64,000 nt of DNA from Octopus bimaculoides (GCF_001194135.2 NC_068982.1:174754231-174818230), one strand, 5' to 3'; shown: positions 47,066-63,025, counted from the first letter of the stretch. Notes: generated by a model not told the origin, from the sequence alone. Program-made: numbers and translations.

Positions 47066-47370
47066 TCAGTACGGTTTAACATAATAGTTGTATGGTTTGA
47101 AATTATAGTTTGAGGTTGGAGCTTGCATCTTCAGTCTGTGGTCAAGGTCCCTGATATTCAGATCATCATATTTGACACTGAAATCCTCATCTAAGCTGGA
47201 CTCGTCGAAATTAAGAGCGCGAAACGTGTAGTTGCTGGGCAAAACATGAGATCCAGTTGTTTCCAAGGGATCAGTACTCAAAATTAGATTTGTATTCATG
47301 TGATTGACATTCGAAAGTTCTTCTTCTGAATCATTTGCTTCAGCTTGAAGTTCTTCTTCACGTGTTCGAT
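47066..47370 (-). CDS. NRL protein, last coding exon ((D)RTREEELQAEANDSEEEL...NFKPYNYYVKPY*)
   Basis: Acceptor taattttccag|, phase 1, open to a stop at 47066. The three exons total 1237+267+305=1809 nt = 602 aa + stop. Confidence 0.8.
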
Positions 47371-47729
47371 CTGGAAAATTATTTAATATAAATATTGATT
47401 AGGGTTTATAGTTTGTTTCATTAAATTTAAGATTTAAAACGCATGACTATTTCTATGTTCGACGTTATTTCTAAGAATAATTTTGATCTGCAATCGACAA
47501 TATGACGACGTACAGGTGGTGAAAACTAGACTGTAAAATTACTGCAGGATTGATTATTCGACCTACATTTTGATTTTTCATCTTCCAAGTGTTGAAACGA
47601 TTAATGATTATTGGTTTCCATGCTAAAAAATTTAATGTAAGGAGTGGTAAGTGCAATAACAGTAGATGCAAACACGAATTAGTAGTAGTAGTATAGGCGG
47701 CAGCAGCAGCAGCCGCCGTCGTCGTCGTC

Positions 47730-47785
<56 letters not shown>

Positions 47786-49893
47786 TTCGCCACGAGATCG
47801 ATGAGCGAGAGATTACAAGGATTGAGAACAAATTTCTGTGATGGGGTTACAACCAGTTTGAAAAAAAGAAAAAAAAAACAGGCATGTGAAAATAATATAA
47901 GCATGCACATGAAAAGGAAAAACTCCACTAGAGAAGCATATATCTATGACCAACCATGAAATTTTACGGATTCAGGATTACTCTGACTTCCAAGAGCAAA
48001 TTCTCTCTCTTTCTCAGTCGTAGACTCCGGCCTACTGAGAGCAGAAGCCCCAATCACCTAGGTTACACTTGCTACCCTCTCAACATTTTAGTAGGTAAGG
48101 ACGACCCTTTACACCAACTTCACATTCTCTTTGTGGTACTCGAAAACGTTGATGAGAACTTGACCGGAGACGAAGGCTCTTGTCGTCAGACCTCTCGATG
48201 TTGTCCTTCACACAAGCATTTTCACTATAGATATTAGAGAGGAAACAACATTTCCTTCCTTGTACTCATCACAAAAGATGGTAAAGCGATCTTGATGATG
48301 GATGACACGTGACAACAGTTGTCCGACATAATTCCACAACTCAGCAATGTTCAGACACATAACGAGTGCATGTAGAAAGATTTCATCATCACTTCGGACG
48401 TGTCTATAGAGTTTATCCTGGACCTACAAGTGTAATGGTGACCCAGTCGAAAGCTTTAGAATGACCTTAATTTATTACAACCCTACACAAGACAGATCTA
48501 TCACCAACCTTCTCTACTAATGTGTAGCTTGAGTTAGAAATGGAATGGATCCGCAGGAATCACAGTTATGAGTGGTGTAGATGACGGATAAAATATCTAA
48601 CTTTGCATTCAGCCGAGTAATGGATTAAAAATCTTCAATGGCGTCTCTCTTGTTGACGTCTTTCCTTGGTAGCTCTACCACTCACCGCTCTACATATTTG
48701 GGAATTCACCTCGTTTGCGGCCAGTTGCAATGGACATCTGCTAAGATAATAGGTAACACACCTCACGAATTCTAGTTGCTGATATCGTCTTTTCTCAATG
48801 CTCCAACTCGTGACAACCATCAAGGTAGGCACTAAGTTCACCTTCTTCACTCAACCGCTTCCCTAAAACAGTCGAGAAGTGTCACTAAATAAACTACACT
48901 CACCTGTCTGACATCCATTGTTGTCTGTGGAAGACTGAATTTCTTCTCATATGGGCAGAGAGTCTGCCGGATTTATCCAACGGTTTTCGCCTTCATGTGT
49001 TTAAGAGCATGTATCTTTACTCCAATAACGCAGCTTTTATGTTTTATGTTAATGAAATGATCGAGTGATAATCCAGTAACAAGCACATCGATTGCGAAGC
49101 TTTTTCTAACAGCCTCTTCTAAACAGTTTACATTCTCTCCTCCTAGTGATTTGAATTCCAAGCCGGTTCCAGGCCACATGGAACTAACTCTTTGCGACAG
49201 GCTACATTGAGAAAAAAAGTGGGGACGACCACTTATATTGTTCCATGAGGCCGAATAATCGGGTGGGGGTGCGCTCTTGAAGTGTTTATCCAAATTTCAA
49301 ATTTTTAAAAATTAGCAAAACAATTTCACCCACTTAAAAGATTTGGAAGAAATCTGGCTATTATTTCGACCTGACCAAAAGACTACCAAGAAGCTCCTTT
49401 ATTTTTCGGTTCATAGTGCCAAGCTACTAAAAAATAAATATGGATCCCTTCGACATGACTAGAGTCAAAAGTAACATTCCCAGAAGAAAATGAAGTTTGC
49501 ATAAATACTTACTAAAATGCTTGATGGGAGGGGGAGAGAATATCTATAGATTGTAAATGTCAAGAGAATAGTTTTTAGATTCCTCGTGTCGTCTGTGATG
49601 CTCACCGATCATTTCTGTTACAACAGTTGCAGTATTTCCTCATGTATCAACTTAATTTGGGAGGAATTTTTTCTCTGTTCCTACTAACTCTTTTCTTCCT
49701 TTCTTGACATTTCTCTTTCCCTTTCTGTCTCTCCCCCATCCTCTTTCTCTCTCTTCTTCAGTGTGTGTGTGTGTGTCTGTGACTGCGTCTGTGTGTCTGT
49801 CTGTCGTTTTCTGTCTGTCTGTCTCTCGCTCTCTCTCTCTCGTTCTCGTATGCCTTACACACTTTAACCTTCATACATACACATTTTACTTAC

Positions 49894-50160
49894 CCGATGA
49901 CTGGACCCTTAAATAATCCCCGGCAATAAACGAACCACTTCCGCTGGTTACCGGAACTCTGTCGTTTTCAGCCTTTCTGCTTTTTTCAAGGTGTTCAATA
50001 GTCTGCCGAAGTCTTTTACATAGGTTAACTGCAGCTCTAGCAATGTACTTTGAGGGAATGATGCTTTTGTCCAAAGATTTTTCTAATGCTGCTTCACTGA
50101 AAGCACTCCAATCCACTGATTTGATAAGCGACGTGCGTTCCTCTTTAGTCATCGCTTGTT
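49894..50160 (-). CDS. NRL protein, second coding exon ((E)QAMTKEERTSLIKSVDWSAFSEAALEKSLDKSIIPSKYIARAAVNLCKRLRQTIEHLEK...VQSS)
   Basis: Acceptor ttctcttcctag| and donor TCGG|gtaagt; 267 nt, phase 1 to 1. It continues the NPH3 domain end (compare LSE.ER..LC..MDC.KLS.EAC.HAAQNERLPLR) into a coiled-coil-like stretch. Confidence 0.88.
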
Positions 50161-52349
50161 CTAGGAAGAGAAGAGAGAAAGTGAGAAGAAAGGTAACGGT
50201 GAGGGGGGAAAGGGAAGTTTGAAGAAGACTTTGGTGAATATAAAGAGAAATGTGGAGAAGGAGGGTTATAAGGAGAAGGGGAGAAAAGGAAGAAGAAGGA
50301 GAAGAAATAAGGAGAAGGGAAGAAGAAGAAGAAGAAGAAGAAGAAGAAGAAGAAGAAGAAGAAGAAGAAGAAGAAGAAGGTGATGATGTTGTAGGCAATG
50401 CTATTTGAAACAAGTTCGTTTCGCTCGCAAAATATTAGCTGGGATTCAACTACAGTTATCTCCCCTGTCGAATGTTCTAGAACCTTCCAAGCAACAGTGT
50501 TTATCCCCCTTCCTTTGCAAGTATACAAGGCATAACTGCTAAACAACACACAGAGGGGTAATAGAAGCAATATCGTCTACTTAAGAGCGAATTCCAATTG
50601 AATCGCTTCTTCTCTAAGACGCGGCGAGGTCAACATCAGAGAGAGAGAGAGAGAGAGAGAGCCAGGTATAAGGATTCGATATTCTCTCTCATCAGCAACT
50701 CGCTATGGTATTCTTCACCTAGTGCCTGTCTGGAAGTAATTTTTGTAGTTTGAATTCTTCCTATTTTCTCACTGTCATCGTAGAATATGGCAAGATGTTC
50801 AGAATCTTTAACTTCAATCCCAGATAACCTGACTGAACTTTATGTACTCACAGTACGAATTCGTTTATTACGCATCTGAATAAAACATGATACGAAGTTG
50901 TTCACCCACTGATACAAGTGTTTATTGTCCCTTACTGCAGCACAGGAATAATACAGCCATTGAATTAATGACTCGGTGCAGTCGTTAAAGTAGTGATATC
51001 TTCATTAGCGACTTCCTTCGCTAAAATGAAGACTACGAAATTTAGGGATGAGGAAATAGGGAAGATCCTTATTAGTTTGTATTTTCTCAACAGATACTAT
51101 TGAATGAAAACACAATCGACCGCCGTAGGATTTGAAATCGTTAAATATGAGGCTTCGATATTGGTAATATGATACATTTTGAATGGAACTTATATACTGG
51201 TCTTATTCAACTAATCTGTCATGTAGACAAGTTCTGTGTTATAGACATATTGCAATTCTTCATTTCTCCTCCTGAAAAAAAAACTATTCAGGCATACATG
51301 GTTAGTTCAATTGTATACGAAACCGAGGTCAACTCTTTTCTGCCAAATAACGAAACTGAAAGGAAAAATGTATCAGACAATGCGGAAACGAAAAAGATAC
51401 GCCGACCATCAGTCTTCTTTCTGACACGTAGGCAAGAAGAAAAGCACTAAGCTACTAGCTACATCGGTGATCTGAAAGCCAAACGTACCCACCATACAGC
51501 ATCGAGTGGAACATCGGTGAGAGATCTACGCCACACATGAATGGGTCAAGTAAGTACAGACTTTGTAAAACTGAAAGAACACACATCCTTTTTAAGTCTA
51601 AGGACTCCACCGACCTGGTCTTTTATGGCATTTGACTCAACTCCTACTTTTAGGTTCAAAATCTCAGCTCAACTAAATTTGTCTCTGTAAGTTAATAAAT
51701 ATATGATGTGTTTGGATTTATTCCACTGACTAACATTCTCTTTACAAGAAAAAATCTCAGCTTGAACCCACTCAAAAGTAATTGTTGGGTGTATATGTGC
51801 TAGAAAGATCGAATGTTTTATTCTAAATAATCATGTGTTAGAAAGATCGAATAAACAGTTTATTTAAAAGCTAGGAAAAAATCCACACCTCGCCCAATCT
51901 CCCACAACATTGTAAATATTATCACAAGTGCATACGTTGACATATCGATTGCTTCAACAAGTAGAAAAGTTATCAGTGAAAATCCGTGCCCCGTGTCCGA
52001 AGTGTCAAGCTAAATAAATTTACAACTGCAAAGCTGATTAGGGATATTATTGCAAAAAAACAAACATGGCTTAATTCATAAAATCCTCTAAATTCAGAGC
52101 TCAGATGATTTAAGTGATTGTCTTAGTAGTTAGAGGTTGAAAAGTTTGTTTATAATATCGTTATCGCAGTGAGCTGTTGTTTGTAATTAATGAAGGGGTG
52201 ACAAGGGGAGATTCTGTTTTGATACTTAGCTTCAGATTAGAGGCTCAAATATTTAGTCACTATCCATATCGGATCCATATTGAAAACAAAGTGTTTCTGT
52301 ATCTCAGATTGAGTGTATATCACTTGTTGAGGTTCTATTATAAGACCTT

Positions 52350-53680
52350 TGGAAAAATATGTTCTCCTTCTACGTAACGAATGGGTATAGTGGATCCCTC
52401 ACTTCTTCCTTGAAACAGCAGTTCGAGTTGTTCGAATCTACCTCAACCACTGTTCATCTCAGGTGGGTCATCAGCTCAACCCCGAACAATGGTCAACAAC
52501 CTAACTTAAAGAAGGCTGTTGACGCCAAATTCAACGCATCTGACATTAAATGTGGCTGTTCGCCTTCTTTCCTAGCTGTCCTCCCTCGTCGTGTGTACCA
52601 CAGACTCCCTTAACCAACTGAAGGAGAAACATCCTCCGTCCACTCCAGGTGATCATCTACACTGGCCCTACCTACCAAGTTTTCTACAACCCATCTTTAC
52701 CCCTGACAATGTTAGGAGGGCAATTACCTCTTTTCCAGCAGGTTCTGGCGCTGGGATCGATGGCTTACGATCTCAGCATCTCAAGGATGGTATCTCCTTG
52801 TCAGCTGGCGATGCTGGGCTCGAACTTTTGGAGAACCTAACACAGTTCATAAACTTGTTCTCGTCCGAGAGTGTCCTTGCTTACATTCGTCCCATGTTCT
52901 TTGAGGTTAAACTATTTGGTCTCACCAAGCCCAACGATGACCTCTGCCCCCAAAGCAGTTGGTTGTACTCTGCGACGGCTCACGACAAGAGTGTGCCTAT
53001 CCTCAGTTTCTAACTGCCTAACCGAAGAATTTTCCCCTATTCAGCTAGGAATGGGTACTAAGCTAGGTTGTGAGGTTGCCACTCATTCCACCAGGGCTTG
53101 CTCTCTGAGTCCCCAAAGGTCATCCTCAAACTTAACCTTAAGAATGCTTCTAACTCCATCAGTCGAGATGTCACCCTCCGCGCAGTAAGGGAGAATTCCC
53201 CACCATTTTATCATTTTGCTTGGCAAGCCTATTGGGAGCCCTCCTTCTCGTTTGGTGATCACCTCATCTCATCTGCCTCTGGAGTCCAACAGGGTAATAC
53301 ATTTGGTCCTGCCCTATTCGCATTAGGTATTGATGATATTACCAAGATGGGAACCGACCTAGATCTAAATGTCTGGTACCTCGATGATGTTTGTTTGGGA
53401 GGCCTTCCTGACAAGGTGCTTACAACAGCGAGGACGATGATCGAGGAACTTAGTCGTAGAGGTCTTAGCGTTAACAGCTCCAAATGCAAGCTCTGGCTCC
53501 TCAACCACCCAGCTTCGCATGAGCAGTCTATCACACTATTTGTTGACTCCCTCCCCCTCAATCGCGATTCCTCCTTCATCAGTGTGGTGCTCCCTTGGAG
53601 ACTCAATTACTGACCTAGCTATCGAATCCATCTTTAGATCCAAAATGGCTAACCTCGAACAACTTAAAAAAAAACCTTGA
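52350..53680 (+). mobile_element. CRE-clade non-LTR retrotransposon RT region, frameshifted and truncated
   Basis: SFPAGSGAGIDGLRSQHLKD, AVGCTLRRL, QLGMGTKLGCEVATHSTR, KLNLKNASNSISR, SGVQQGNTFGPALF, WYLDD and GLSVNSSKC are RT subdomains in the CRE/SLACS style. Confidence 0.8.
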
Positions 53681-53900
53681 AGTAACTGAGCCCCACCAAG
53701 TTTTTTTTTATACTTTGGAATTACTTGTCAATTCCTAAGCTATTATATTTTGTTTAAGTGAAATAAATATTAACAGTGGATATTAGCTATGGGCATGAAA
53801 ATATGATATGAGAAAGTATAGTCAGAGAATCTTATTTGTTTTGTGCCATTCTTGACTGAAGATATAGCTTTTAGAAGCAACGTCGCCAGGTTTGTATAAA

Positions 53901-54816
53901 TCTATACTATAAATTGCAGTGTTCTTGATTGCTTGCTTGATTGATTGATTGATTGATTGAGTGTCGGCAGATTCACTCGAGAACGGTGCAGTGGAATCGC
54001 GTGAAATTCAGCACAGAGCGACAGCATGGTCCGCTCGTGTTCAGGAGATTTTTATTGCCCTCCAACTCCTATGGTTACCGAGATAATTGATTATTACTTT
54101 TTAAGATAGGAATATCCCATTCAAAGTGGGGAGGGGCGATTTTGTTGCCTTTCCCATGCGCGAAATTTTACGAAAAACCAGCACAATAAAGATTATTTTT
54201 TTCCAAGTAATGTGGCTGGGTTTGTTTTTCGAAAATTTTAATCAGAGGCACAGAAAAAAAATAATTTCAATTTTTTGTGCATTAAAAAAAAAAAAAGCTA
54301 TAGCTTACGCTCTTTCTAATTACTGTTTTTTTTAACTTCAGTTACAAATGTCTTCAAACATCGACATTCAAACAGCTTTTCCATATTGAGACAAACGTAC
54401 TCTGCACAATTGTATTCATCCGGGAACGCGTTTTCAATAATTGAAATTCACAATTCTAATCAGTGTACATGAACGTCCAACCTATGATTGATCTTGAACA
54501 GTTTCGATTAACATTCTTGTGTCGCCAATACAACAACCGCACTACCATATATTTTTCTTTTAAGGCGAGGTTATACCACAAATAAGGTTCCGTGACTACA
54601 TGGGGCTATGGTTACGCACGTGAAGTTAGTTTTACAATATCGACCCGCAAAATCCTTAGCATTTTTTAGTTTTGGGGTTGTTCTTACTTTTTTTTTTGTT
54701 TTTGGAATTTTTGTTTTTTTTATTTTTAGTTCCTTTTATTATTCAAAATATACATAGGAAATAGCCTTTAACCAAATCCACCACACTGCCCGAGTGAAAC
54801 CGGGAAAAACAGCTAG
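53901..54816 (+). mobile_element. Complete non-autonomous Helitron, 916 bp
   Basis: 5-prime A|TCTATACTATAAA; 3-prime hairpin CCCG-agtgaaac-CGGG, then CTAG|T; no TSD; (GATT)n near the 5-prime end. Confidence 0.85.
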
Positions 54817-55939
54817 TATCATATAACTCGCTGATTAAGGTGTCAAACCTTTCTAACGACTATTGTATCTTTGGACTTAAAATGTACGGTCTCGTGCTTT
54901 AGACAGAAATGTATCTTTTTCATTTCTCATTTAAGTTTTTCTGCGAGGAATTTCTTTTCTGTTGTAATACAGGTTCTGCATAATAGCATTATCAAATGCC
55001 TACGGCATCGATAGAAATTATACACGACTTACGAGATACACTTTTAAGATCAGATATGATCAATATGTACAGACATTCAGGTCGAGTGACGAAGAGAATT
55101 CTAACTCTTTCACGTTTAGAAATTAAGGCATGGCTGAAATAAAAGTGTCTCCATAACCTAGAATATCGTAAGCAGAGCAACCGCATACAATAACGAGGCT
55201 AGAAACTGCTGATTTAATTATTCTATAGATCTTTGGCCCTCGTTGTAATACATATTCTATACAACATCATCATGGTGGGTGTTAAATAAATCTTCGTTTT
55301 TACTTATTTATTTCAAAACATTAGTAATTTCAATCAACCTCTGTCCACCTGTTGACAGCATTTGCCTACTTGAAGTGACATTGATAAATTGTCTGTATGT
55401 ATGTGACAAATATGAGTGTCCTGTATAACATATTTAAACATTACTAATCCCCGAATTCCTTTATCTATAGATACTACACTATGGCCTAACTTTTGGGCTC
55501 TAATCTACACAACACATTAAACCTAATCACTTGGTTACCTAACATAAATATTTTCTTCTGTACTTTATTGTTGCTTTTTATGGAAAGAAGGAGTTAATAT
55601 GCCTGCTTGTAGATACATCACTAACCCTCATCTCTCATGCTCTAATCAATACAAAATGTTAAGCCTGTTACCTTGACATGAAATATTCTTACTCTATACA
55701 TTACTATCGTTTTTTAATGGGAAGTAGGGTTTAAATTAATGCCCCCAAGCCTGCCCCACGCCTCACAGTCACTGGTACGCAATGACTACTGACATATACT
55801 CAAAATCTTTCATTTAGGAGAAAAGAAAAGTAGTGATGTTCGAGTGTTTCTCATGGATATTAGCAATGTATTTGAACAGAAAGGGCTTCAATTGATAGGG
55901 GATTTTCTGATGTCATGTAAACCATGTTGTTATATCTTT

Positions 55940-56235
55940 TATTTGTTTCAGTCATTAGACTGCGGCCATGCTGGGGCACTGCCTTGAAGAATATTAGTCG
56001 AACGAATCGACCTCCGTACTTATTACTCTTTCGGCTTTTCTGCCGAGCCGCTACGTTACGGGGGCATAAACACATACACAATGACACACACTTACATATA
56101 TATACGACATGCTTCTTTCAGTTTCCGTCTATCTAATCCACTCACAAGGCTTTGGTCGGCCCGAGGCTATAGTAGAAGACACTTGTCCAAGGTGCCATTT
56201 AGTGGGACTGAATCAAGAATCATGTGGTTGAAAAG
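55940..56235 (-). mobile_element. SINE family B copy
   Basis: Reverse complement of the 34420-34826 family. Confidence 0.8.
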
Positions 56236-57939
56236 CATGCTCCGGATCTATTTTAAAACGGGGCCACATTTTTCATTAATGTTTTACGTAGTGTTTTTGG
56301 TACGGAAAGACTTTCAAACTTCGTATACTTATCTATTTTGTGTTATAGAGCAGAAAAATATTTTTGTATTCGAATTTATTTCATGTTAAAAATTGTCTTA
56401 TTTCGATAATTTCAANNNNNNNNNNNNNNNNNNNNNNNNNNNNNNNNNNNNNNNNNNNNNNNNNNNNNNNNNNNNNNNNNNNNNNNNNNNNNNNNNNNNN
56501 NNNNNNNNNNNNNNNNNNNNNNNNNNNNNNNNNNNNNNNNNNNNNNNNNNNNNNNNNNNNNNNNNNNNNNNNNNNNNNNNNNNNNNNNNNNNNNNNNNNN
56601 NNNNNNNNNNNNNNNNNNNNNNNNNNNNNNNNNNNNNNNNNNNNNNNNNNNNNNNNNNNNNNNNNNNNNNNNNNNNNNNNNNNNNNNNNNNNNNNNNNNN
56701 NNNNNNNNNNNNNNNNNNNNNNNNNNNNNNNNNNNNNNNNNNNNNNNNNNNNNNNNNNNNNNNNNNNNNNNNNNNNNNNNNNNNNNNNNNNNNNNNNNNN
56801 NNNNNNNNNNNNNNNNNNNNNNNNNNNNNNNNNNNNNNNNNNNNNNNNNNNNNNNNNNNNNNNNNNNNNNNNNNNNNNNNNNNNNNNNNNNNNNNNNNNN
56901 NNNNNNNNNNNNNNNNNNNNNNNNNNNNNNNNNNNNNNNNNNNNNNNNTCCCATGCTCCTTACCACACACCATCATATGCATATCAGCATCATATTTCTC
57001 ATCATAATTTTTAACACATCCCAGAACCTTGCAAATGAACGAAAGAAATCAGTTATTGTGAACATAGCAAAAAAAAAAAAATCAAACTTCAGAGTTTTAG
57101 TGACATAGCAACGTTGTGTCAGATTAATCGTAACTTGCCTCACAAAAAAAATTTAACTGGAAATACTCAGTCGCTGAAGAAATGGCATTACCTCAATAAC
57201 TAATATTTCATTACCATTTCGGCAAGTACGAAAGTAACTTGAGACCTGTTTCGGTCTTAGCGAAGGAGACACTTACCCGTGTTTGCCGAAGTTGTTAGGA
57301 AAAAATCACTATGTAGATAAACAATACTGTAGACAAATAAGCGAAAAAATGTAGCATTTTTATATTATATCAGTTTGCGTTATGCATTTTGGTAATGCAT
57401 CCTCCACATGATTCACTTCGGAGAAAATCGGTTCTGACACTTCCTTGACCAAATGGTATCGCATTAAGCATCGAGTTTTTGACTTTATTTTCGTTTTGTG
57501 TGTATTTTTCTTATCGATAAAATAAGTATAAAAACATAACGAACTATCCTTTCTGTCGTTTTTTCACCTCCTCTTCAGCTATAATATTGATCTCTAGCAT
57601 TGACACAAGGCTTTTAGTTTGATGGTATTATAGTATAATTGATTAAATCATTAAATCAACTCATTATTTGACTAGTACTTTATTTTATCGATCTCGAAAG
57701 CATGAAAGAAGTTGACGTTAGCTGGATTTTAACTTCAACAATCTAACATTTCTGTTAATCCACAACGTTTAATANNNNNNNNNNNNNNNNNNNNNNNNNN
57801 NNNNNNNNNNNNNNNNNNNNNNNNNNNNNNNNNNNNNNNNNNNNNNNNNNNNNNNNNNNNNNNNNNNNNNNNNNNNNNNNNNNNNNNNNNNNNNNNNNNN
57901 NNNNNNNNNNNNNNNNNNNNNNNNNNNNNNNNNNNNNNN

Positions 57940-57983
<44 letters not shown>

Positions 57984-59195
57984 GTTATACTATTGATATC
58001 ATAACAGTTTAAAATCACAAATATATTTTGTCAACATTGGTGTGATTAAAGACAATGTCAGTCCCAAACTTATTCAGTGCATAGGTGTATGATTACTACA
58101 TCTTTTTAATGATCGATTAATTGACTACAGGCCTCCCATTCAAATTTGTGGCTTTATACTAAAGTTAAAAATCATAGGTAGAATCGGTGGAGCAATAAAT
58201 TGAATACATTGCGATATTTTGCTACGCATTTTCTTGTTCGACTTTGAATCCCGCCGAGGTCTACTTTGCCTCTCTTCTTCAAGTAATAATTGTTTTTAAC
58301 AAAGGCACAGAGCCCGGGTTTGCCGATTAATTCGATCCCAATACTTGACCTACCCTTTATTTTTCGACACCGGAGGGATAAAATGCAAAGCTGACTTTGA
58401 TGGAACTTGAACTCTGAACAAACAGTGCAAAACCTTTTGACCGACGCTTTAATGACTCAGCCAGTAATCAGGTGTCAGTAATCTCAATCTCAATAAACAC
58501 CCTTTGAGCAAGTTCCCAAGACCATAATTATTTCTAACAGATCCGTAATTCGTCTGACGTTCCGTGTGTCATGTGGTTCGTCTGAGTTCATTGTTTCATT
58601 GTTGTTGTCTTGTGGGACTGTCGGGGTAAAATGTCATTGATATATATATGGCGGACATGACTTTTGTTTATTCATAACGAACATTGGGTGAGTGCGTTCT
58701 TTGTATGTAATTGAACAATAAATGTAATAATTAAATTGTATAACTCGTTATGTTATCTCTACGAGTCACCCGAGGGAAACATAACACTAACATTGGCACA
58801 ACTTTAGCGAGAGGGTATAGTCAATTAGTCCTAACCCTAATTGAAACATCCACCACTCAAAACTGTTGGCGTTGAGCTTAAATTTGAAGCTATGATTAGC
58901 TGGCAAGCATTATTAGAGCGTCAGACAATATACCTCGGGGAATTTCAGCCAAATCTTTATGCACTGAGTTCTAATCGTGTCAAAGTCAACCTTGACTTTC
59001 CTCCCTCCGGAATCTATAAAATAAAAGTTCCAGTCAAGTACTAGAATCGATATAATCAACTAACCCCCCCCCTTCAAAATTGCTGGTCTTGTGCCTAAAT
59101 TAAAAACAGTTACAAGCAGCGAGATGTCAAAATCGTTGGAGCGTCGGAATAGATTCCTTGTAGCTTTCCATCCGGCTTAAATTCCTTGCAGCATT

Positions 59196-59405
59196 CTTTT
59201 CTACTCTAGGTACAAGGCCCGAAATTTGGGGGGGGGGCAGTCGATTAGATCTACCCCAGTACGCAACTGGTACTTAATTTATCGACCCCCAAAAGGATGA
59301 AAGGCAAAGTCGACCTCGGCGGAATTTGAACTCAGAACGTAAAGACAGACGAAATACCGCTAAGCATTTCGCCCGGCGTGCTAACGATTCTGCCACCTCA
59401 CCGCC
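59196..59405 (-). mobile_element. Full-length, CpG-intact SINE family A copy flanked by + strand copies (about 58900-59105, 59430-59560, 59570-59790)
   Basis: 14-bp TSD TTCCTTGCAGCATT at 59182-59195 and 59406-59419. Confidence 0.9.
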
Positions 59406-60566
59406 TTCCTTGCAGCATTACTTCCGGTTCTTAACACTCAGAGTTCATCATCTTGGGTCGATAAAAATAATAATAACAGTCAAGTACTGGAATCGATGGT
59501 ATCGATTAACCTCATTAAAATTACCCTAAACATTTTCTGACCTTGTGTCTTAATTAGAAACAAATATTTTAAGGGTGGTTGATTTGCGGAATTGTTTAAG
59601 CGTCGGACAAAAATTTGCTTTGTGGTGTTTGTTCCCGCTCTTTTATGTGCTGAGTTCAACTCATGTCAAGGTCAACTTTGCCTTTCATCATTTGTAGGTC
59701 GATAAAGTAGAATACCAGTCAAATACCGCAGTCGATGTAATCAATTAACTTCCTCTCACAAATTTTAGGCCTTGTACCTATCTCAGAAATTATTATTATT
59801 ATTATTATTACTAATTATAGTAGTAGTAGTAGTTGCATGCTATTTTTATTTCACTGCGCATCAGTCCTAAGCGAATAACTTATGATCAAAGACATTCTAC
59901 CCATGACCATCTCGTCTTTTTCCTGTCCAGGGAACCTAAGAATAGATCGTTCCACGTGTCCTTTATTTAAGATAGCAAGGTGTATATTTGAGGGAGGTTT
60001 GGCTACCATTTCGAAAACAATTACTAGCGAGGTCGGTGAAAAGCAAAATTGGTAGAACGTCGGATAAATTGCCTGACAATATGTAGTAACTGATGATTTT
60101 TTACATTCTGAGTTTGCAATCCTCATTATGAGCTCGATAGGATAAGGTCTTATTCAAGTACTGAGGTTGGGACCAGATAAAATCGATGTAATCGACTGTG
60201 CCGCCAAAGAAGGGTTGATTACATGCTTTTTTGATCAGCTATTTCTGAAAAGTTTCGTTGGGCAGAAATAAGGAGTACCCCTGTAAAAGAATGTTTTCTT
60301 AGAGAAGATATAAACTTAAATTTAGATGAAGAGAAAATAGGGTTCGGTATTATAACATTCATATCTATTCAAACTGAAACGATTTTTTCAAGGCGCCAAA
60401 ACTGACTCAACTCGTAAAGAATTTACTGCTACAATAATGGCATACGTCAACATCATGCAACGTCCACAAAGTAAAATGACTAGTTTCTATTATTTCTCGA
60501 AGTCTAAATGATCAGGAATAACAGATTTTTTTTATGCATTAATTTTGTTAAAAACTGTAATCTTAC

Positions 60567-61803
60567 CTGAATCGATCAGACATTCCAAGATCTCTAGAAT
60601 CTTATCAGAGTTGGGTTGATGAACAAGCGGAATGGAAGTGAGCAACATTTTAAAAGTTTCTTTCTTCAGACTATTCCTTTGCGATCTTTCGATCAAATAA
60701 ACATTGATAAATTTGCTGAGTTCATTCACCATCAACGGATCTGCTGCAAAGGAACTTGTAACAATTTCATACATTACATCTGGATTTATGAGGGATATTT
60801 CGCCTGAGGATAACCGATTAAAAAGTGGACGAATCGCTTTTTTCAAAACTGCTTGTCTTTGCTGGGGTTCACAGGAAATTATTTCAGGCAAAATTGTTAG
60901 AATATTATCTACAGAAAAGAAATCATTTTCAAAAGTTTCGAGGGGTAGTTCTTCCAACATGGCAGCCATCACAATAGTACTACGCTTGATACGTCCAACT
61001 TCGTTTTCTTCGGAATTAACATATTTAGTGTCTCTAATTAAATCGCAGTCACGAACTATGTGTGGTTTTCCTGATTGATCGTCATTTTTCTTCAAATTCT
61101 CGAAATCTCCCTTTTCAACAAAACTGTTCTCCATTGCAAGGCGAATCAGTGACAGTACCAGCTCAGACAAGCAATTTTTCTGGACCCCTTTCTCTTTGGC
61201 ACATGCTATAACTTTAAGTATCCAAACAATGGGTAATTCATACAACTGTTCAACAACGCCACTGTCATATACATCGATAAGTTTCTTCCGATTGGGGTTG
61301 CTGAACCTTGTCGGAGGTGTAGACCAACATCTTGCCAGTGCATCCGTGCATTTATCAACCAAACCTATTTCCTCAGCCATTTCCCTGACATTGCAACAGT
61401 TCTGTAAAAGCTTAATGATGGTGTCAGCAGACCGACTAATCTTTGAAGACATTACCATATTTTCGATAAATTTTTCAGTCATTTCGATTAAGTTATCTGT
61501 ACCCATCATCTCCAAATAAGCTGCTGCCAGTCGGAGTTCAACCACATTATCGACGATCAAACTTATATTGATTCCATAACAAAAATCTGCAATAAGACCA
61601 AATACATCTGAACCACCCGGGAAATCTTTCAGTTCTAAACTTAGAACGTTTCCAACAATTCCTTCAGACAATTCCCTCACACGCTTGCAAATGTAGTCGG
61701 ACTTGGTTAGCAAAGGAAATCTGTGAAGTTTAAATTCTGTGTTACCAACCCAGATGGTAATATCTGAGAACTCTCCATTTTCCCGGAATTTGGCGTAACT
61801 CAT
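60567..61803 (-). CDS. BTB/POZ + NPH3-domain protein (NPH3/RPT2-like, NRL), first coding exon, 412 codons + 1 nt
   Basis: Motifs SDITIWVGNTEFKLHRFPLL, DFPGGSDVFGLIADFCYG, NVVELRLAAAYLEM and NLIEMTEKF match plant NRL BTB motifs (LHKFPLL, PGG..FEL.AKFCYG, NV..LRCAAEYL.M). Donor TCAG|gtaaga at 60567/60566; upstream acceptor near 61824. Confidence 0.92.
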
Positions 61804-63025
61804 GTTTCGTTCGGGATGAAGAGACTGACTCGTGAAATATTAATAAATGTATAAATATTTGTTCGTTTGTTTGTATGTATGTATGTATGTATGTATGTAT
61901 GTATGCACAAACTGGTTATATTCCTTGCTTTATCTTTCTCTTCCCTAGTTTCACTATGACTGTTTTGTATTTACTGACAATAAAAGTGTAGGTAAATATT
62001 CATGCGTCTATACAGCTATCATTGGTAGTATAATATAATTCATAGTCTTTATATGCGAATTTATAATTATATTTACATGTACACATACCTATAAAATATG
62101 GGACGATGCACACACATGTATGTATATATATATATATATATATATACTACTGCACAAATGTGTGTTTACAAACACTTGTGTTGCTCTTGTAAAAATGCGT
62201 ACTTCTTTGTATATATATGTATATGTGATTGTGTGTTTACAAACAATTGTGTGTGCATGTACGTGTGAGAATAAACAAAAAAAGAGTGTGTGATGTGTAT
62301 GACTGTATGTGTGTGTGGGTTTGTGTGTATGTATTTCTTTCAAAAACTAAAATTCGTGTCTAAAATGTTACACCGAAGAAACGATTTCCTGCAAGGGTCT
62401 ATCAGTGAACGTACGTAATGAGTTAGAAACACTATATCACTCACTGAATGAACAGGTCAATCCCAGAATGCAATTCTCTTTTGTTGTTCATGCTATTTTT
62501 TTTTTGTTTTTTTTTGTTTTTGCTGTCATTGAAACAAAATATTTTCTACTCATGAAAAATTTTCTTCGATATTTATTATTAGTTTTTTTTGTTACTTATT
62601 CTAAAGTTATAAGACTGCTGGTTGATTAATATATTGATTGATTGATTTAGTGGTTCAGTATTCTAAAGTGTCGTCTGGTTTTGCGACAAGAGTCTGCCTT
62701 TCTCAGCATTTATTTATCTCTTTCTTCTTTCTCTTTTATATTACGCGCACAGAAGCACACACATATATCATCTTGTGTGTGTGTGTGTGTGTGTGTGTAC
62801 GTATGTGTGTGTGTACGTGTGTGTGAGTGTGTGTGAGTGTGTCTGCGTGCGCGTGTATGTTTTTTATATATATATATACATTCAGTCGCACGCGCTCACA
62901 CACACATGTATAAATAGCTATATATACACATACATTTTTATGTACGTATATGCGCGTGTGTATAATTTATATATATATATATATATGTACATTATATATA
63001 TATACATACATACATACATACGTAC

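What the first reader, a model, noticed from the sequence alone, without database searches (positions are those of the whole stretch)
47066..61803. Intact plant-type NPH3/RPT2-like (BTB + NPH3 domain) gene inside an animal genome
Seen: three exons splice in frame (all phase-1 junctions) into a 602-aa protein with NRL-type BTB motifs (LHRFPLL, PGGSDVFGLIADFCYG, LRLAAAYLEM, NLIEMTEKF). An NPH3-domain end is split cleanly across intron 1 (SDKILEILECLIDS|EQAMTKEERTSLIKSVDW, compare DDGLYRAIDIYLKAHP.LSE.ER..LC..MDC). The introns hold the same SINE families as the neighbouring CLINT1 gene, so this is not plant contamination. Established: Arabidopsis NPH3/RPT2 and rice CPT1 are CUL3 substrate adaptors acting downstream of phototropin, the family is usually called plant-specific, and animals have no phototropin. 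Inference: this is either an old horizontal acquisition or an ancient family lost in most animals, and its receptor and substrate are unknown. A membrane-receptor ubiquitination module, possibly light-related, is conceivable but unproven. I recall automated annotations of similar proteins in some molluscs, so the sequence may be catalogued even if its function is not.
Basis: partly seen in the sequence, partly recalled or inferred. Interest (0 to 1): 0.8.

Follow-up and report, generated by a model that had tools for sequence, protein, structure and literature searches.

The report
Octopus gene with 'plant-only' NPH3 domain
An intact, conserved octopus gene encodes a BTB + NPH3 protein, a design the literature calls plant-specific; it belongs to an old, unstudied family also found in sponges, a soft coral, flatworms, annelids, molluscs and an acorn worm, so it is neither contamination nor a recent transfer from plants.

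Summary
On the minus strand, three GT-AG exons (61803-60567, 50160-49894, 47370-47066) join in phase 1 into a 602-aa protein. Both N gaps lie inside intron 1 and hide no exon.

The protein has a BTB domain and a complete but divergent NPH3 domain. Alone it scores 26.3 bits against Pfam NPH3 (cutoff 27). A profile of its animal relatives aligns to plant NPH3 without the BTB domain at E 1e-27.

It is not an octopus oddity. Relatives occur in other cephalopods, gastropods, a nemertean, an annelid, flatworms, a rotifer, a hemichordate, an octocoral and homoscleromorph sponges. Four bilaterian phyla share the same two phase-1 introns. In a tree the animals fall outside a 100%-supported plant clade. 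dN/dS against O. vulgaris is 0.23.

So this is an ancient metazoan BTB-NPH3 clade. Recent transfer and contamination are excluded; a very old inter-kingdom transfer is not.

Papers I found call NPH3 plant-specific and "not found in metazoans", and none describes the animal clade. Automated annotation already names the gene.

The likely mechanism is inferred: a dimeric CUL3-type adaptor or trafficking scaffold. Nothing supports a link to light.

The parts
60567..61803 (-). Coding exon 1 (residues 1-412 plus the first base of codon 413). Holds BTB, the BACK-like helices, a disordered insert and most of the NPH3 domain.
   Evidence: ORF and splice donor. 80% DNA identity to Argonauta over 60546-61807. 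Same exon in O. vulgaris.
61465..61791 (-). BTB/POZ domain, residues 5-113.
   Evidence: Pfam PF00651, E 3e-8, 34.3 bits against a cutoff of 20.5. AF2 pLDDT 80-93. Foldseek matches to ZBTB8A, PLZF and BCL6 BTB domains, TM 0.75.
61123..61452 (-). BACK-like / 3-box helical region, which is the N-terminal part of the NPH3 domain (residues ~118-227).
   Evidence: Foldseek aligns ~230-250 columns of the model with the BTB-BACK of KLHL11, KBTBD2, KBTBD4 and vaccinia A55 in CUL3 complexes. It aligns to the start of the plant NPH3 region in hhalign.
60988..61122 (-). Disordered, variable insert inside the NPH3 domain (residues 228-272).
   Evidence: AF2 pLDDT below 50. This is a gap-rich, length-variable region in the family alignments.
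60567..60987 (-). C-terminal half of the NPH3 domain, exon 1 part (residues 273-412).
   Evidence: hhalign to plant NPH3. The Pfam NPH3 match starts at residue 358. AF2 helices, pLDDT 84-90.
50161..60566 (-). Intron 1 (phase 1, GT-AG). Contains both N gaps (56416-56948, 57775-57939), interspersed repeats and a reverse-transcriptase fragment.
   Evidence: Collinear with the gap-free O. vulgaris and O. sinensis introns. The intron site is shared with Haliotis, Owenia and Ptychodera.
49894..50160 (-). Coding exon 2, 267 nt (residues 413-501). Holds the end of the NPH3 domain (to ~468; window 49994-50160), a long helix (449-478) and the start of the disordered tail.
   Evidence: Splice sites. Pfam NPH3 match to residue 436. 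78% DNA identity to Argonauta. Ptychodera exon 2 is also 267 nt and phase 1/1.
47371..49893 (-). Intron 2 (phase 1, GT-AG).
   Evidence: A phase-1 intron at the corresponding point, between the short middle exon and the last exon, is present in Haliotis, Owenia and Ptychodera.
47066..47370 (-). Coding exon 3 (residues 502-602 plus TGA). An acidic, disordered tail with a motif shared among molluscs (NYTFRALNFDESSLDEDF..K....R.LD.RLK) and a Tyr-rich end (KPYNYYVKPY).
   Evidence: AF2 pLDDT below 50. Tail alignment across molluscs. 71% DNA identity to Argonauta.

Best explanation
Identity (largely shown): this is a functional, single-locus octopus gene for a BTB-NPH3 protein. It is a member of a metazoan clade of the family known from plants as NRL (NPH3/RPT2-like). 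The clade goes back at least to the common ancestor of sponges, cnidarians and bilaterians and was inherited vertically. Its two phase-1 introns are at least as old as the bilaterian ancestor.

Mechanism (inferred, by analogy):
- The N-terminal BTB domain dimerises. Together with the following BACK-like/3-box helices it docks on cullin-3.
- The helical NPH3 domain (residues ~118-470) is the partner- or substrate-binding platform. If the plant NRL5 result generalises, it is nucleotide-dependent.
- The acidic, disordered C-terminal tail carries short conserved motifs for regulation or recruitment.

The protein would therefore act as a CUL3 substrate adaptor and/or a membrane-trafficking or polarity scaffold. 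Its clients cannot be phototropins or PIN carriers, which animals lack (my own knowledge).
For: Gene reality:
- Intact three-exon ORF with canonical splice sites.
- 96% identical 602-aa orthologue in O. vulgaris/O. sinensis and 76% identical orthologue in Argonauta.
- dS 0.083, dN 0.019, dN/dS 0.23.
- Only the exons are conserved against Argonauta.
- Spliced mRNA contigs of a cephalopod homologue in 5 sequencing runs.

Domain identity:
- BTB at E 3e-8. NPH3 at E 7e-6, 26.3 bits.
- 21 of 25 animal relatives hit Pfam NPH3 at E<=0.01, best 2.2e-18. Ptychodera scores 53 bits and Adineta 51 bits, both above the 27-bit cutoff, and Adineta covers profile positions 27-255 of 258.
- Profile-profile, animal against plant: probability 100%, E 7.5e-57 over 423 columns.
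- With the BTB domain removed: probability 99.8%, E 1.2e-27 over 300 columns covering the whole domain.
- A profile of the cephalopod non-BTB region alone pulls plant NRLs out of 1.84 billion proteins at E 1e-8 to 1e-3.

Age and vertical descent:
- Named members come from gastropods, a nemertean, an annelid, a free-living flatworm, flukes and tapeworms, a rotifer, a hemichordate, an octocoral and two homoscleromorph sponges.
- Their neighbours are ordinary animal genes: FGF, GPCRs, GALC-like, PRC1-like, ribosomal L7Ae.
- Intron positions and phases are identical in Octopus, Haliotis, Owenia and Ptychodera.
- NJ tree of the NPH3 region: plants 100/100, cephalopods 100, gastropods 100, molluscs 85, flatworms 83, sponges 100.

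Mechanism:
- The AF2 model is confident for residues 1-227 and 268-480 and all-helical after the BTB domain.
- The N-terminal ~240 residues match BTB-BACK modules of CUL3 adaptors solved with CUL3.
- A hydrophobic-x-Asp/Glu motif sits after helix 3. This is where, as I recall, BTB-Kelch adaptors contact CUL3. It reads L-S-E in octopus and M-x-D in most relatives.
- Plant NPH3-domain proteins are described as candidate CUL3 adaptors and, for NRL5 and six others, as GTPases that bind RABs and VAMP721/722 (PMC11313873).
Against: - No experiment or expression data for the octopus gene itself was available.
- The octopus protein is 0.7 bits below Pfam's NPH3 cutoff, and only the last third of the profile matches it directly.
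- CUL3 binding, dimerisation and GTPase activity are not shown for any animal member.
- The paper gives no GTP-binding motif for NPH3 domains, so that property cannot be checked in sequence.
- The deep branches among animal phyla are weakly supported (30-56%).
- Only about 35 of the 108 hit clusters could be assigned to an organism.
- The distribution across eukaryotes is patchy: plants, animals and one unnamed environmental lineage. That also fits an ancient transfer.
Confidence: 0.6

Rival explanations
1. Ancient inter-kingdom transfer. The BTB-NPH3 gene arose in the green lineage (or in stem animals) and crossed once, before the animal phyla diverged. Inheritance within animals was vertical after that.
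For: - Papers place the origin of NPH3 at the base of plants (PMC4327156; PMC1257465).
- The exhaustive profile search found only 108 clusters. All those I could name were animals or plants, apart from one unnamed environmental lineage.
- No member from fungi or named protists came up.
- Sponge and octocoral genes are intronless.
Against: - Animals fall outside a 100%-supported plant clade. An unrooted tree cannot by itself show that they are not nested within plants.
- Animal-to-plant identity is only about 18-24%, no closer than sponge to octopus.
- Intron sites differ in phase.
- A third lineage with a different architecture (NPH3 + EDC4_C) exists. That hints at a wider and older distribution.
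Confidence: 0.25
2. Same protein, different mode of action. It is not a ubiquitin-ligase adaptor but a trafficking-associated NPH3-type GTPase or RAB/SNARE-binding scaffold, as proposed for Arabidopsis NRL5. It could also be both.
For: - NRL5 and six other plant NPH3-domain proteins hydrolyse GTP and bind RABE1c, RABH1b and VAMP721/722 (PMC11313873).
- RABs and longin VAMPs are conserved in animals (my own knowledge).
- The best-conserved block between animals and plants is the C-terminal NPH3 core, not only the BTB domain.
Against: - No nucleotide-binding motif is defined for NPH3, so none can be checked.
- The fold search finds no GTPase-like match.
- The BTB + 3-box architecture is the classic CUL3-adaptor design.
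Confidence: 0.25
3. Plant contamination of the assembly, or a recent plant-to-octopus transfer.
For: The only support is the plant-like names given by automated annotation.
Against: - The locus is collinear in three Octopus assemblies and in Argonauta, on chromosome-scale scaffolds.
- The introns carry repeats that are also spread through the rest of the window and through the Argonauta locus.
- The sequence is only ~25% identical to plant NRLs.
- A case that looks like real contamination is quite different: a plant-type NRL (P0147) on an unplaced 53-kb contig of a frog assembly.
Confidence: 0.01
4. An ordinary animal BTB-BACK-Kelch or BTB-ZF protein whose NPH3 resemblance is spurious, or a decaying pseudogene.
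For: The single-sequence Pfam NPH3 score is just under the cutoff. Foldseek hits are BTB-BACK proteins.
Against: - No Kelch, BACK or zinc-finger Pfam hit.
- The model is all-helical after the BTB domain.
- NPH3-only profile-profile comparison gives E 1.2e-27.
- The ORF is intact with dN/dS 0.23, and its length is conserved.
Confidence: 0.02

Closest known systems
Plant NRL family (NPH3, RPT2, NPY/MAB4, NRL5; Pfam PF00651 + PF03000)
   Same: - Same architecture: N-terminal BTB, then a complete NPH3 domain, then a long helix and a disordered tail.
- Homology runs over both domains.
- BTB motifs are of the NRL type (LH+FPL, FPGG..F...A.FCYG, LRCAAE.L.M, NLI..TE.FL).
- The NPH3 core is conserved: D.YL...A....L....F..L....P...R...D.L...(L/I)...L, then ...ER......(I/L)D...LS.EA......P.
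   Different: - A separate clade outside the plants, about 18-25% identical to them.
- The octopus protein has lost some plant-invariant residues that other animals keep (N367 for Asp, Q396 for Arg; read).
- Bilaterian genes have two phase-1 introns, where the plant gene examined has phase-0 introns.
- The tail is acidic and ends in ...KPY. From my own knowledge, plant NPH3 has a polybasic membrane-binding stretch and a C-terminal 14-3-3 site. Neither is visible here.
- The plant partners (phototropins, PIN carriers) do not exist in animals (my own knowledge).
Animal BTB-BACK-Kelch CUL3 adaptors (KLHL11, KLHL3, KBTBD2, KBTBD4, KEAP1; vaccinia A55)
   Same: The BTB domain plus the following helical 3-box/BACK-like module superpose over ~230-250 columns. 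A hydrophobic-x-acidic motif follows helix 3.
   Different: - No Kelch propeller.
- The substrate-side domain is a ~350-residue helical NPH3 domain with no solved relative.
- By sequence, the BTB domain matches plant NRLs (E about 1e-15 to 1e-17) far better than solved animal BTB domains (best E 1e-4).
Unnamed environmental eukaryote proteins with (BTB)-NPH3-EDC4_C (P0141, P0098, P0144, P0145)
   Same: They carry an NPH3 domain above the Pfam cutoff (38 bits) and an NRL-type BTB remnant.
   Different: They are fused to the C-terminal domain of the mRNA-decapping enhancer EDC4. Their organism is unknown, and they share no tail motif with the animal clade.

Membership tests
BTB-NPH3 (NRL) superfamily | N-terminal BTB/POZ domain | tested here: met
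   PF00651, E 3e-8, 34.3 bits against a cutoff of 20.5, residues 5-113. Supported by the structure model and fold matches.
BTB-NPH3 (NRL) superfamily | NPH3 domain (PF03000) reaching Pfam's curated cutoff in this protein alone | tested here: inconclusive
   26.3 bits against a cutoff of 27, E 7e-6. Only profile positions 179-256 of 258 match. Relatives do pass: Ptychodera 53.1 bits, Adineta 50.6 bits.
BTB-NPH3 (NRL) superfamily | Homology to the NPH3 domain over its whole length, independent of the BTB domain | tested here: met
   hhalign of the animal against the plant NPH3-only alignments: probability 99.8%, E 1.2e-27, 300 columns. 21 of 25 animal members hit PF03000. Plant NRLs were retrieved by the cephalopod non-BTB profile.
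BTB-NPH3 (NRL) superfamily | C-terminal coiled-coil after the NPH3 domain (a feature I recall of many plant NRLs) | tested here: inconclusive
   The AF2 model has one long helix at 449-478, followed by disorder. No coiled-coil predictor was available.
Plant NPH3/RPT2 orthologue ('plant-type', as the finding's title says) | Groups within plant NRL subfamilies in a tree | tested here: not met
   In the NJ tree of the NPH3 region, plants form a 100/100 clade that excludes all animal sequences. The octopus protein groups with molluscs (85).
Plant NPH3/RPT2 orthologue ('plant-type', as the finding's title says) | Tail features that link NPH3 to phototropin signalling: a polybasic membrane-binding motif and a C-terminal 14-3-3 phosphosite (recalled from memory, not looked up) | tested here: not met
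   Read directly from the sequence: the tail (residues 483-602) is acidic, has no basic cluster and ends ...NYYVKPY with no Ser/Thr near the C-terminus.
Plant NPH3/RPT2 orthologue ('plant-type', as the finding's title says) | Binds phototropin / acts downstream of a LOV-kinase photoreceptor | not testable with these tools
   This needs interaction assays. Animals are not known to have phototropins (my own knowledge).
CUL3 substrate adaptors (BTB + 3-box) | BTB followed by 3-box/BACK-like helices, able to dock CUL3 | tested here: inconclusive
   The fold resembles BTB-BACK modules in CUL3 complexes (TM relative to target 0.5-0.7 for the BTB-BACK-only entries). A hydrophobic-x-D/E motif is present. 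No complex prediction or binding test was possible.
BTB-BACK-Kelch (KLHL/KBTBD) | Kelch beta-propeller C-terminal to BACK | tested here: not met
   No Kelch or BACK Pfam hit. The model is all-helical after the BTB domain, with no strands beyond residue 58.
NPH3-type GTPase (as reported for NRL5) | GTP binding and hydrolysis by the NPH3 domain | not testable with these tools
   The paper gives no sequence motif for it. P335 is not conserved even among plants (PMC11313873). A biochemical assay is needed.

The most novel reading that the evidence does not exclude
The BTB-NPH3 module is an ancient eukaryotic device whose original job had nothing to do with light or auxin. It would be a CUL3-linked, possibly GTP-dependent regulator of membrane-protein trafficking or polarity. 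The animal clade still does this for animal cargoes, in parallel with the way NPY/MAB4 proteins keep PIN carriers polar in plants.
Probability: 0.2. Interest if true: 0.75.

Novelty: new variant of a known kind. Interest (0 to 1): 0.55.

Why it matters
Plant biology treats the NPH3 domain as a plant invention. [quoted passage not shown]

An animal clade that is vertically inherited, under purifying selection and reaches back to sponges shows that this statement is wrong. It also provides an outgroup for asking what the domain did before phototropin and auxin signalling existed.

For animal biology it adds an uncharacterised family of probable CUL3 adaptors or trafficking scaffolds. None of the members I could name came from a vertebrate, insect or nematode. 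That may be why the family has gone unnoticed.

Two points limit the importance. The sequences are already in public databases under automated plant-like names. And no function is shown.

Tried and rejected
- tblastn of a recalled human CLINT1 ENTH domain against the window found nothing. Only a recalled C-terminal stretch matched, at 2063-2200. The neighbour's identity therefore stays a lead.
No octopus transcript evidence could be obtained.
- A word-indexed homologue search with an NPH3-only animal alignment returned only 6 proteins. It added little to the taxon list.
- I searched for exons of the SDR (adh_short) gene that spans this locus in the O. sinensis and Argonauta annotations. Motif scans and DNA comparison found none in the window.
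- I tested whether the intron repeats are tRNA-derived SINEs. ARAGORN and Rfam found nothing there.
- A sequence search of the PDB with the NPH3-only profile found no solved relative. NCBIfam found nothing.
- Rejected readings: contamination, recent transfer, pseudogene and BTB-Kelch. Reasons are given under the rival explanations.
- The plant intron and bilaterian intron 1 lie 4 nt apart and differ in phase. I do not count this as a shared intron.

Full report
1. WHAT IS IN THE SEQUENCE

The region holds a minus-strand gene of three coding exons:
- Exon 1: 61803-60567.
- Exon 2: 50160-49894.
- Exon 3: 47370-47066.

Both introns are GT-AG and both junctions are phase 1. The spliced CDS is 1809 nt, giving 602 aa plus TGA.

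2. THE ASSEMBLY GAPS

The two N runs flagged by the scan (56416-56948 and 57775-57939) both lie inside intron 1. Four independent results show they hide no exon and do not break the frame.
- The orthologous loci of O. vulgaris and O. sinensis (L001, L002) have no N in the gene. They are collinear with the window across the whole intron and carry exons of the same sizes (1237/267/305 nt) and a 602-aa product.
- A 604-aa cephalopod homologue (P0003, 45% identical) is encoded without interruption on ~2.2-kb contigs from five sequencing runs. A genomic contig from a close relative matches it only up to residue 409, where the DNA reads CAG|GTAAGT. The short contigs are therefore spliced mRNAs, and the intron site is shared.
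- The Pfam NPH3 match runs straight across the exon 1/2 junction.
- A hemichordate has an exon 2 of exactly 267 nt with the same phases.

3. IS THE GENE REAL AND NATIVE?

- Against the Argonauta locus, the only DNA that stays alignable is the three exons, apart from one ~90-bp repeat.
- Against O. vulgaris, dS is 0.083 and dN 0.019, so dN/dS is 0.23.
- Intron 1 carries interspersed repeats of 140-220 bp. Copies at 70-87% identity lie elsewhere in the window. It also carries a reverse-transcriptase fragment.
- Contamination and recent transfer can be dismissed.
- I could not show that the repeats are SINEs.
- The 'CLINT1' label of the neighbour rests only on a tblastn with a sequence I recalled from memory.

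4. DOMAIN IDENTITY

- Pfam finds BTB at residues 5-113 (E 3e-8).
- Pfam finds NPH3 at residues 358-436 (E 7e-6, 26.3 bits). That is 0.7 bits under the curated cutoff and covers only the end of the profile. On this protein alone the NPH3 call is therefore borderline.
- Family-level evidence settles it:
  - 21 of 25 animal relatives hit PF03000, best E 2.2e-18.
  - Ptychodera (53 bits) and Adineta (51 bits, nearly full-length coverage) pass the cutoff.
  - Profile-profile comparison of the animal and plant alignments gives probability 100%, E 7.5e-57 over 423 columns.
  - With the BTB domain cut off on both sides, it still gives probability 99.8%, E 1.2e-27 over 300 columns spanning the whole domain.
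  - A profile built only from the non-BTB part of five cephalopod proteins recovers plant NRLs from 1.84 billion proteins.

5. STRUCTURE

- The AlphaFold2 model (mean pLDDT 70.9) is confident for residues 1-227 and 268-480.
- It shows a BTB fold followed by helices only.
- Residues 228-272 and the tail from 483 onward are disordered.
- Foldseek matches the first ~240 residues to BTB-BACK modules of CUL3 adaptors solved in complex with CUL3: KLHL11, KBTBD2, KBTBD4 and vaccinia A55.
- The rest of the NPH3 domain has no solved relative.

6. WHO ELSE HAS IT

The exhaustive search returned only 108 clusters at E<=1e-3. Those I could name are:
- Gastropods: Haliotis, Littorina, Physella, Bulinus.
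- Cephalopods: Octopus, Argonauta.
- Nemertean: Tubulanus.
- Annelid: Owenia.
- Flatworms: Macrostomum, Paragonimus, Hymenolepis.
- Rotifer: Adineta.
- Hemichordate: Ptychodera.
- Octocoral: Dendronephthya.
- Homoscleromorph sponges: Oscarella, Corticium.
- Plants.

No named cluster came from a vertebrate, arthropod or nematode. However, I could name only about 35 of the 108 clusters.

Where I fetched the surrounding DNA, the neighbours are ordinary animal genes: FGF, GPCRs, a GALC-like hydrolase, a PRC1-like protein and ribosomal L7Ae.

7. GENE STRUCTURE AND TREE

- Octopus, Haliotis, Owenia and Ptychodera all have the same two phase-1 introns. Intron 1 sits at the same protein position in all four (...LK[ST]|...). 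Intron 2 sits at the corresponding point, after a short middle exon of 267, 279, 291 and 267 nt respectively.
- Many truncated gene predictions from other animals end exactly at this first site.
- The Oscarella and Dendronephthya genes are intronless.
- In the one plant gene I examined (Juglans), the corresponding intron is phase 0 and lies 4 nt upstream in the alignment. It is close but not demonstrably the same intron.
- A neighbour-joining tree of the NPH3 region has these supports: plants 100/100, cephalopods 100, gastropods 100, molluscs 85, flatworms 83, sponges 100. The deep inter-phylum nodes are weak.
- Within animals the well-supported clades follow the species phylogeny.

8. BEST READING OF THE ORIGIN

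The gene is a member of a metazoan BTB-NPH3 clade at least as old as the sponge-bilaterian ancestor. It was inherited vertically and, as far as my sample shows, is missing from the usual model animals.

I cannot tell whether the link to plants is vertical descent from an early eukaryote with many losses, or one very old transfer. A third lineage of unnamed environmental eukaryotes carries NPH3 fused to EDC4_C, which hints at a wider distribution.

9. HOW IT PROBABLY WORKS (INFERRED)

- BTB-mediated dimerisation.
- CUL3 docking through the BTB domain plus 3-box. A hydrophobic-x-Asp/Glu motif after helix 3 (L-S-E in octopus, M-x-D in most relatives) sits where, as I recall, BTB-Kelch adaptors contact CUL3.
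- The NPH3 helical domain as the client-binding platform.
- A disordered acidic tail. Molluscs share the motifs ..SL[DE][DE][DE][LF].[FV]K....[FI]R.LD.R.. and a terminal YFPY/KPY..Y.

The plant literature offers a second mode, not exclusive of the first. NRL5 and six other NPH3-domain proteins hydrolyse GTP and bind RABs and VAMP721/722 (PMC11313873). No motif is defined for this, so I could not test it.

Nothing supports a link to light. The tail shows neither of the plant NPH3 tail features that I recall (a polybasic membrane-binding stretch and a C-terminal 14-3-3 site). Phototropins are unknown in animals (my own knowledge).

10. COMPARISON WITH WHAT IS KNOWN, AND NOVELTY

- It works like, and is homologous to, plant NRL proteins. 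It is a member of the BTB-NPH3 superfamily, not an orthologue of NPH3 or RPT2.
- It shares the BTB + 3-box design of KLHL/KBTBD adaptors but has no Kelch propeller.
- Papers in the searchable library call NPH3 plant-specific. Six searches found none that describes animal members.
- Automated annotation already labels these genes with plant-like names, so the sequences themselves are not new.
- I rate it a new variant of a known kind, of moderate interest. It corrects a widely repeated statement and opens a comparative route to the ancestral function of the domain, but no function is shown.

Noticed in passing
window 4041-4142 (-): Full-length match to U6 spliceosomal snRNA (Rfam RF00026, 71.4 bits, E 4e-16). 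It could be a gene or a U6-derived pseudogene, and it lies inside the neighbouring CLINT1-like gene region.
   Followed up: no
window 2063-2200 (+) and ORF ending at 21902 (+): Probable 3' exons of a CLINT1/EpsinR-like gene, convergent with the BTB-NPH3 gene. A tblastn hit (E 1.4e-4) came from a human CLINT1 C-terminal sequence that I recalled from memory. There is also a terminal ORF ending ...QAFSDFGNVMSK*. The ENTH-domain exons are not in the window.
   Followed up: partly
window 53098-53613 (+), inside intron 1: Reverse-transcriptase fragment (Pfam RVT_1, E 5e-8, 33 bits) from a retrotransposon, antisense to the gene. The adjacent ORF 52591-53013 has no Pfam hit.
   Followed up: partly
L002 1-28760 (O. 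sinensis) and L015 4597-28601 (Argonauta), opposite strand; would correspond to the window + strand from ~43 kb rightwards: In both annotations a short-chain dehydrogenase (adh_short) gene model on the opposite strand spans the whole BTB-NPH3 gene. The gene therefore appears to be nested in an intron of that SDR gene, and the arrangement is conserved across octopods. I found no SDR exon in the window itself.
   Followed up: partly
proteins P0141, P0098, P0144, P0145 (JGI/ENA environmental contigs of 1.4-9.5 kb): An unnamed eukaryotic lineage has proteins that combine an NRL-type BTB remnant, an NPH3 domain (38 bits) and the C-terminal domain of the mRNA-decapping enhancer EDC4 (49 bits). I have not seen this architecture described.
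   Followed up: partly
L016 10001-13363 (Phyllobates terribilis assembly, unplaced 53-kb contig): A typical plant-type NRL protein (P0147, 630 aa) is annotated as a frog protein. By sequence it is a plant NRL, so plant contamination of that assembly is the likely cause. It is a useful contrast to the octopus gene.
   Followed up: partly
Corticium candelabrum contig of 9.05 Mb (P0005, P0062, P0132, P0134); L011 6776-8674 (Oscarella): Homoscleromorph sponges carry several paralogues of the family on one contig, and a tandem BTB neighbour in Oscarella. This points to a local expansion in sponges, against a single copy at the octopus locus.
   Followed up: no
window 56105-56197 (intron 1): A ~90-bp repeat with at least eight copies (75-89% identity) scattered through the 28.6-kb Argonauta locus. 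It appears to be an interspersed element shared across octopods.
   Followed up: no
window 47680-47830 and 50250-50400 (introns 2 and 1): Long trinucleotide microsatellites that read as poly-Ser, poly-Leu, poly-Arg or poly-Glu in the mechanical ORF list. They account for several of the 'ORFs' there and are not coding.
   Followed up: no
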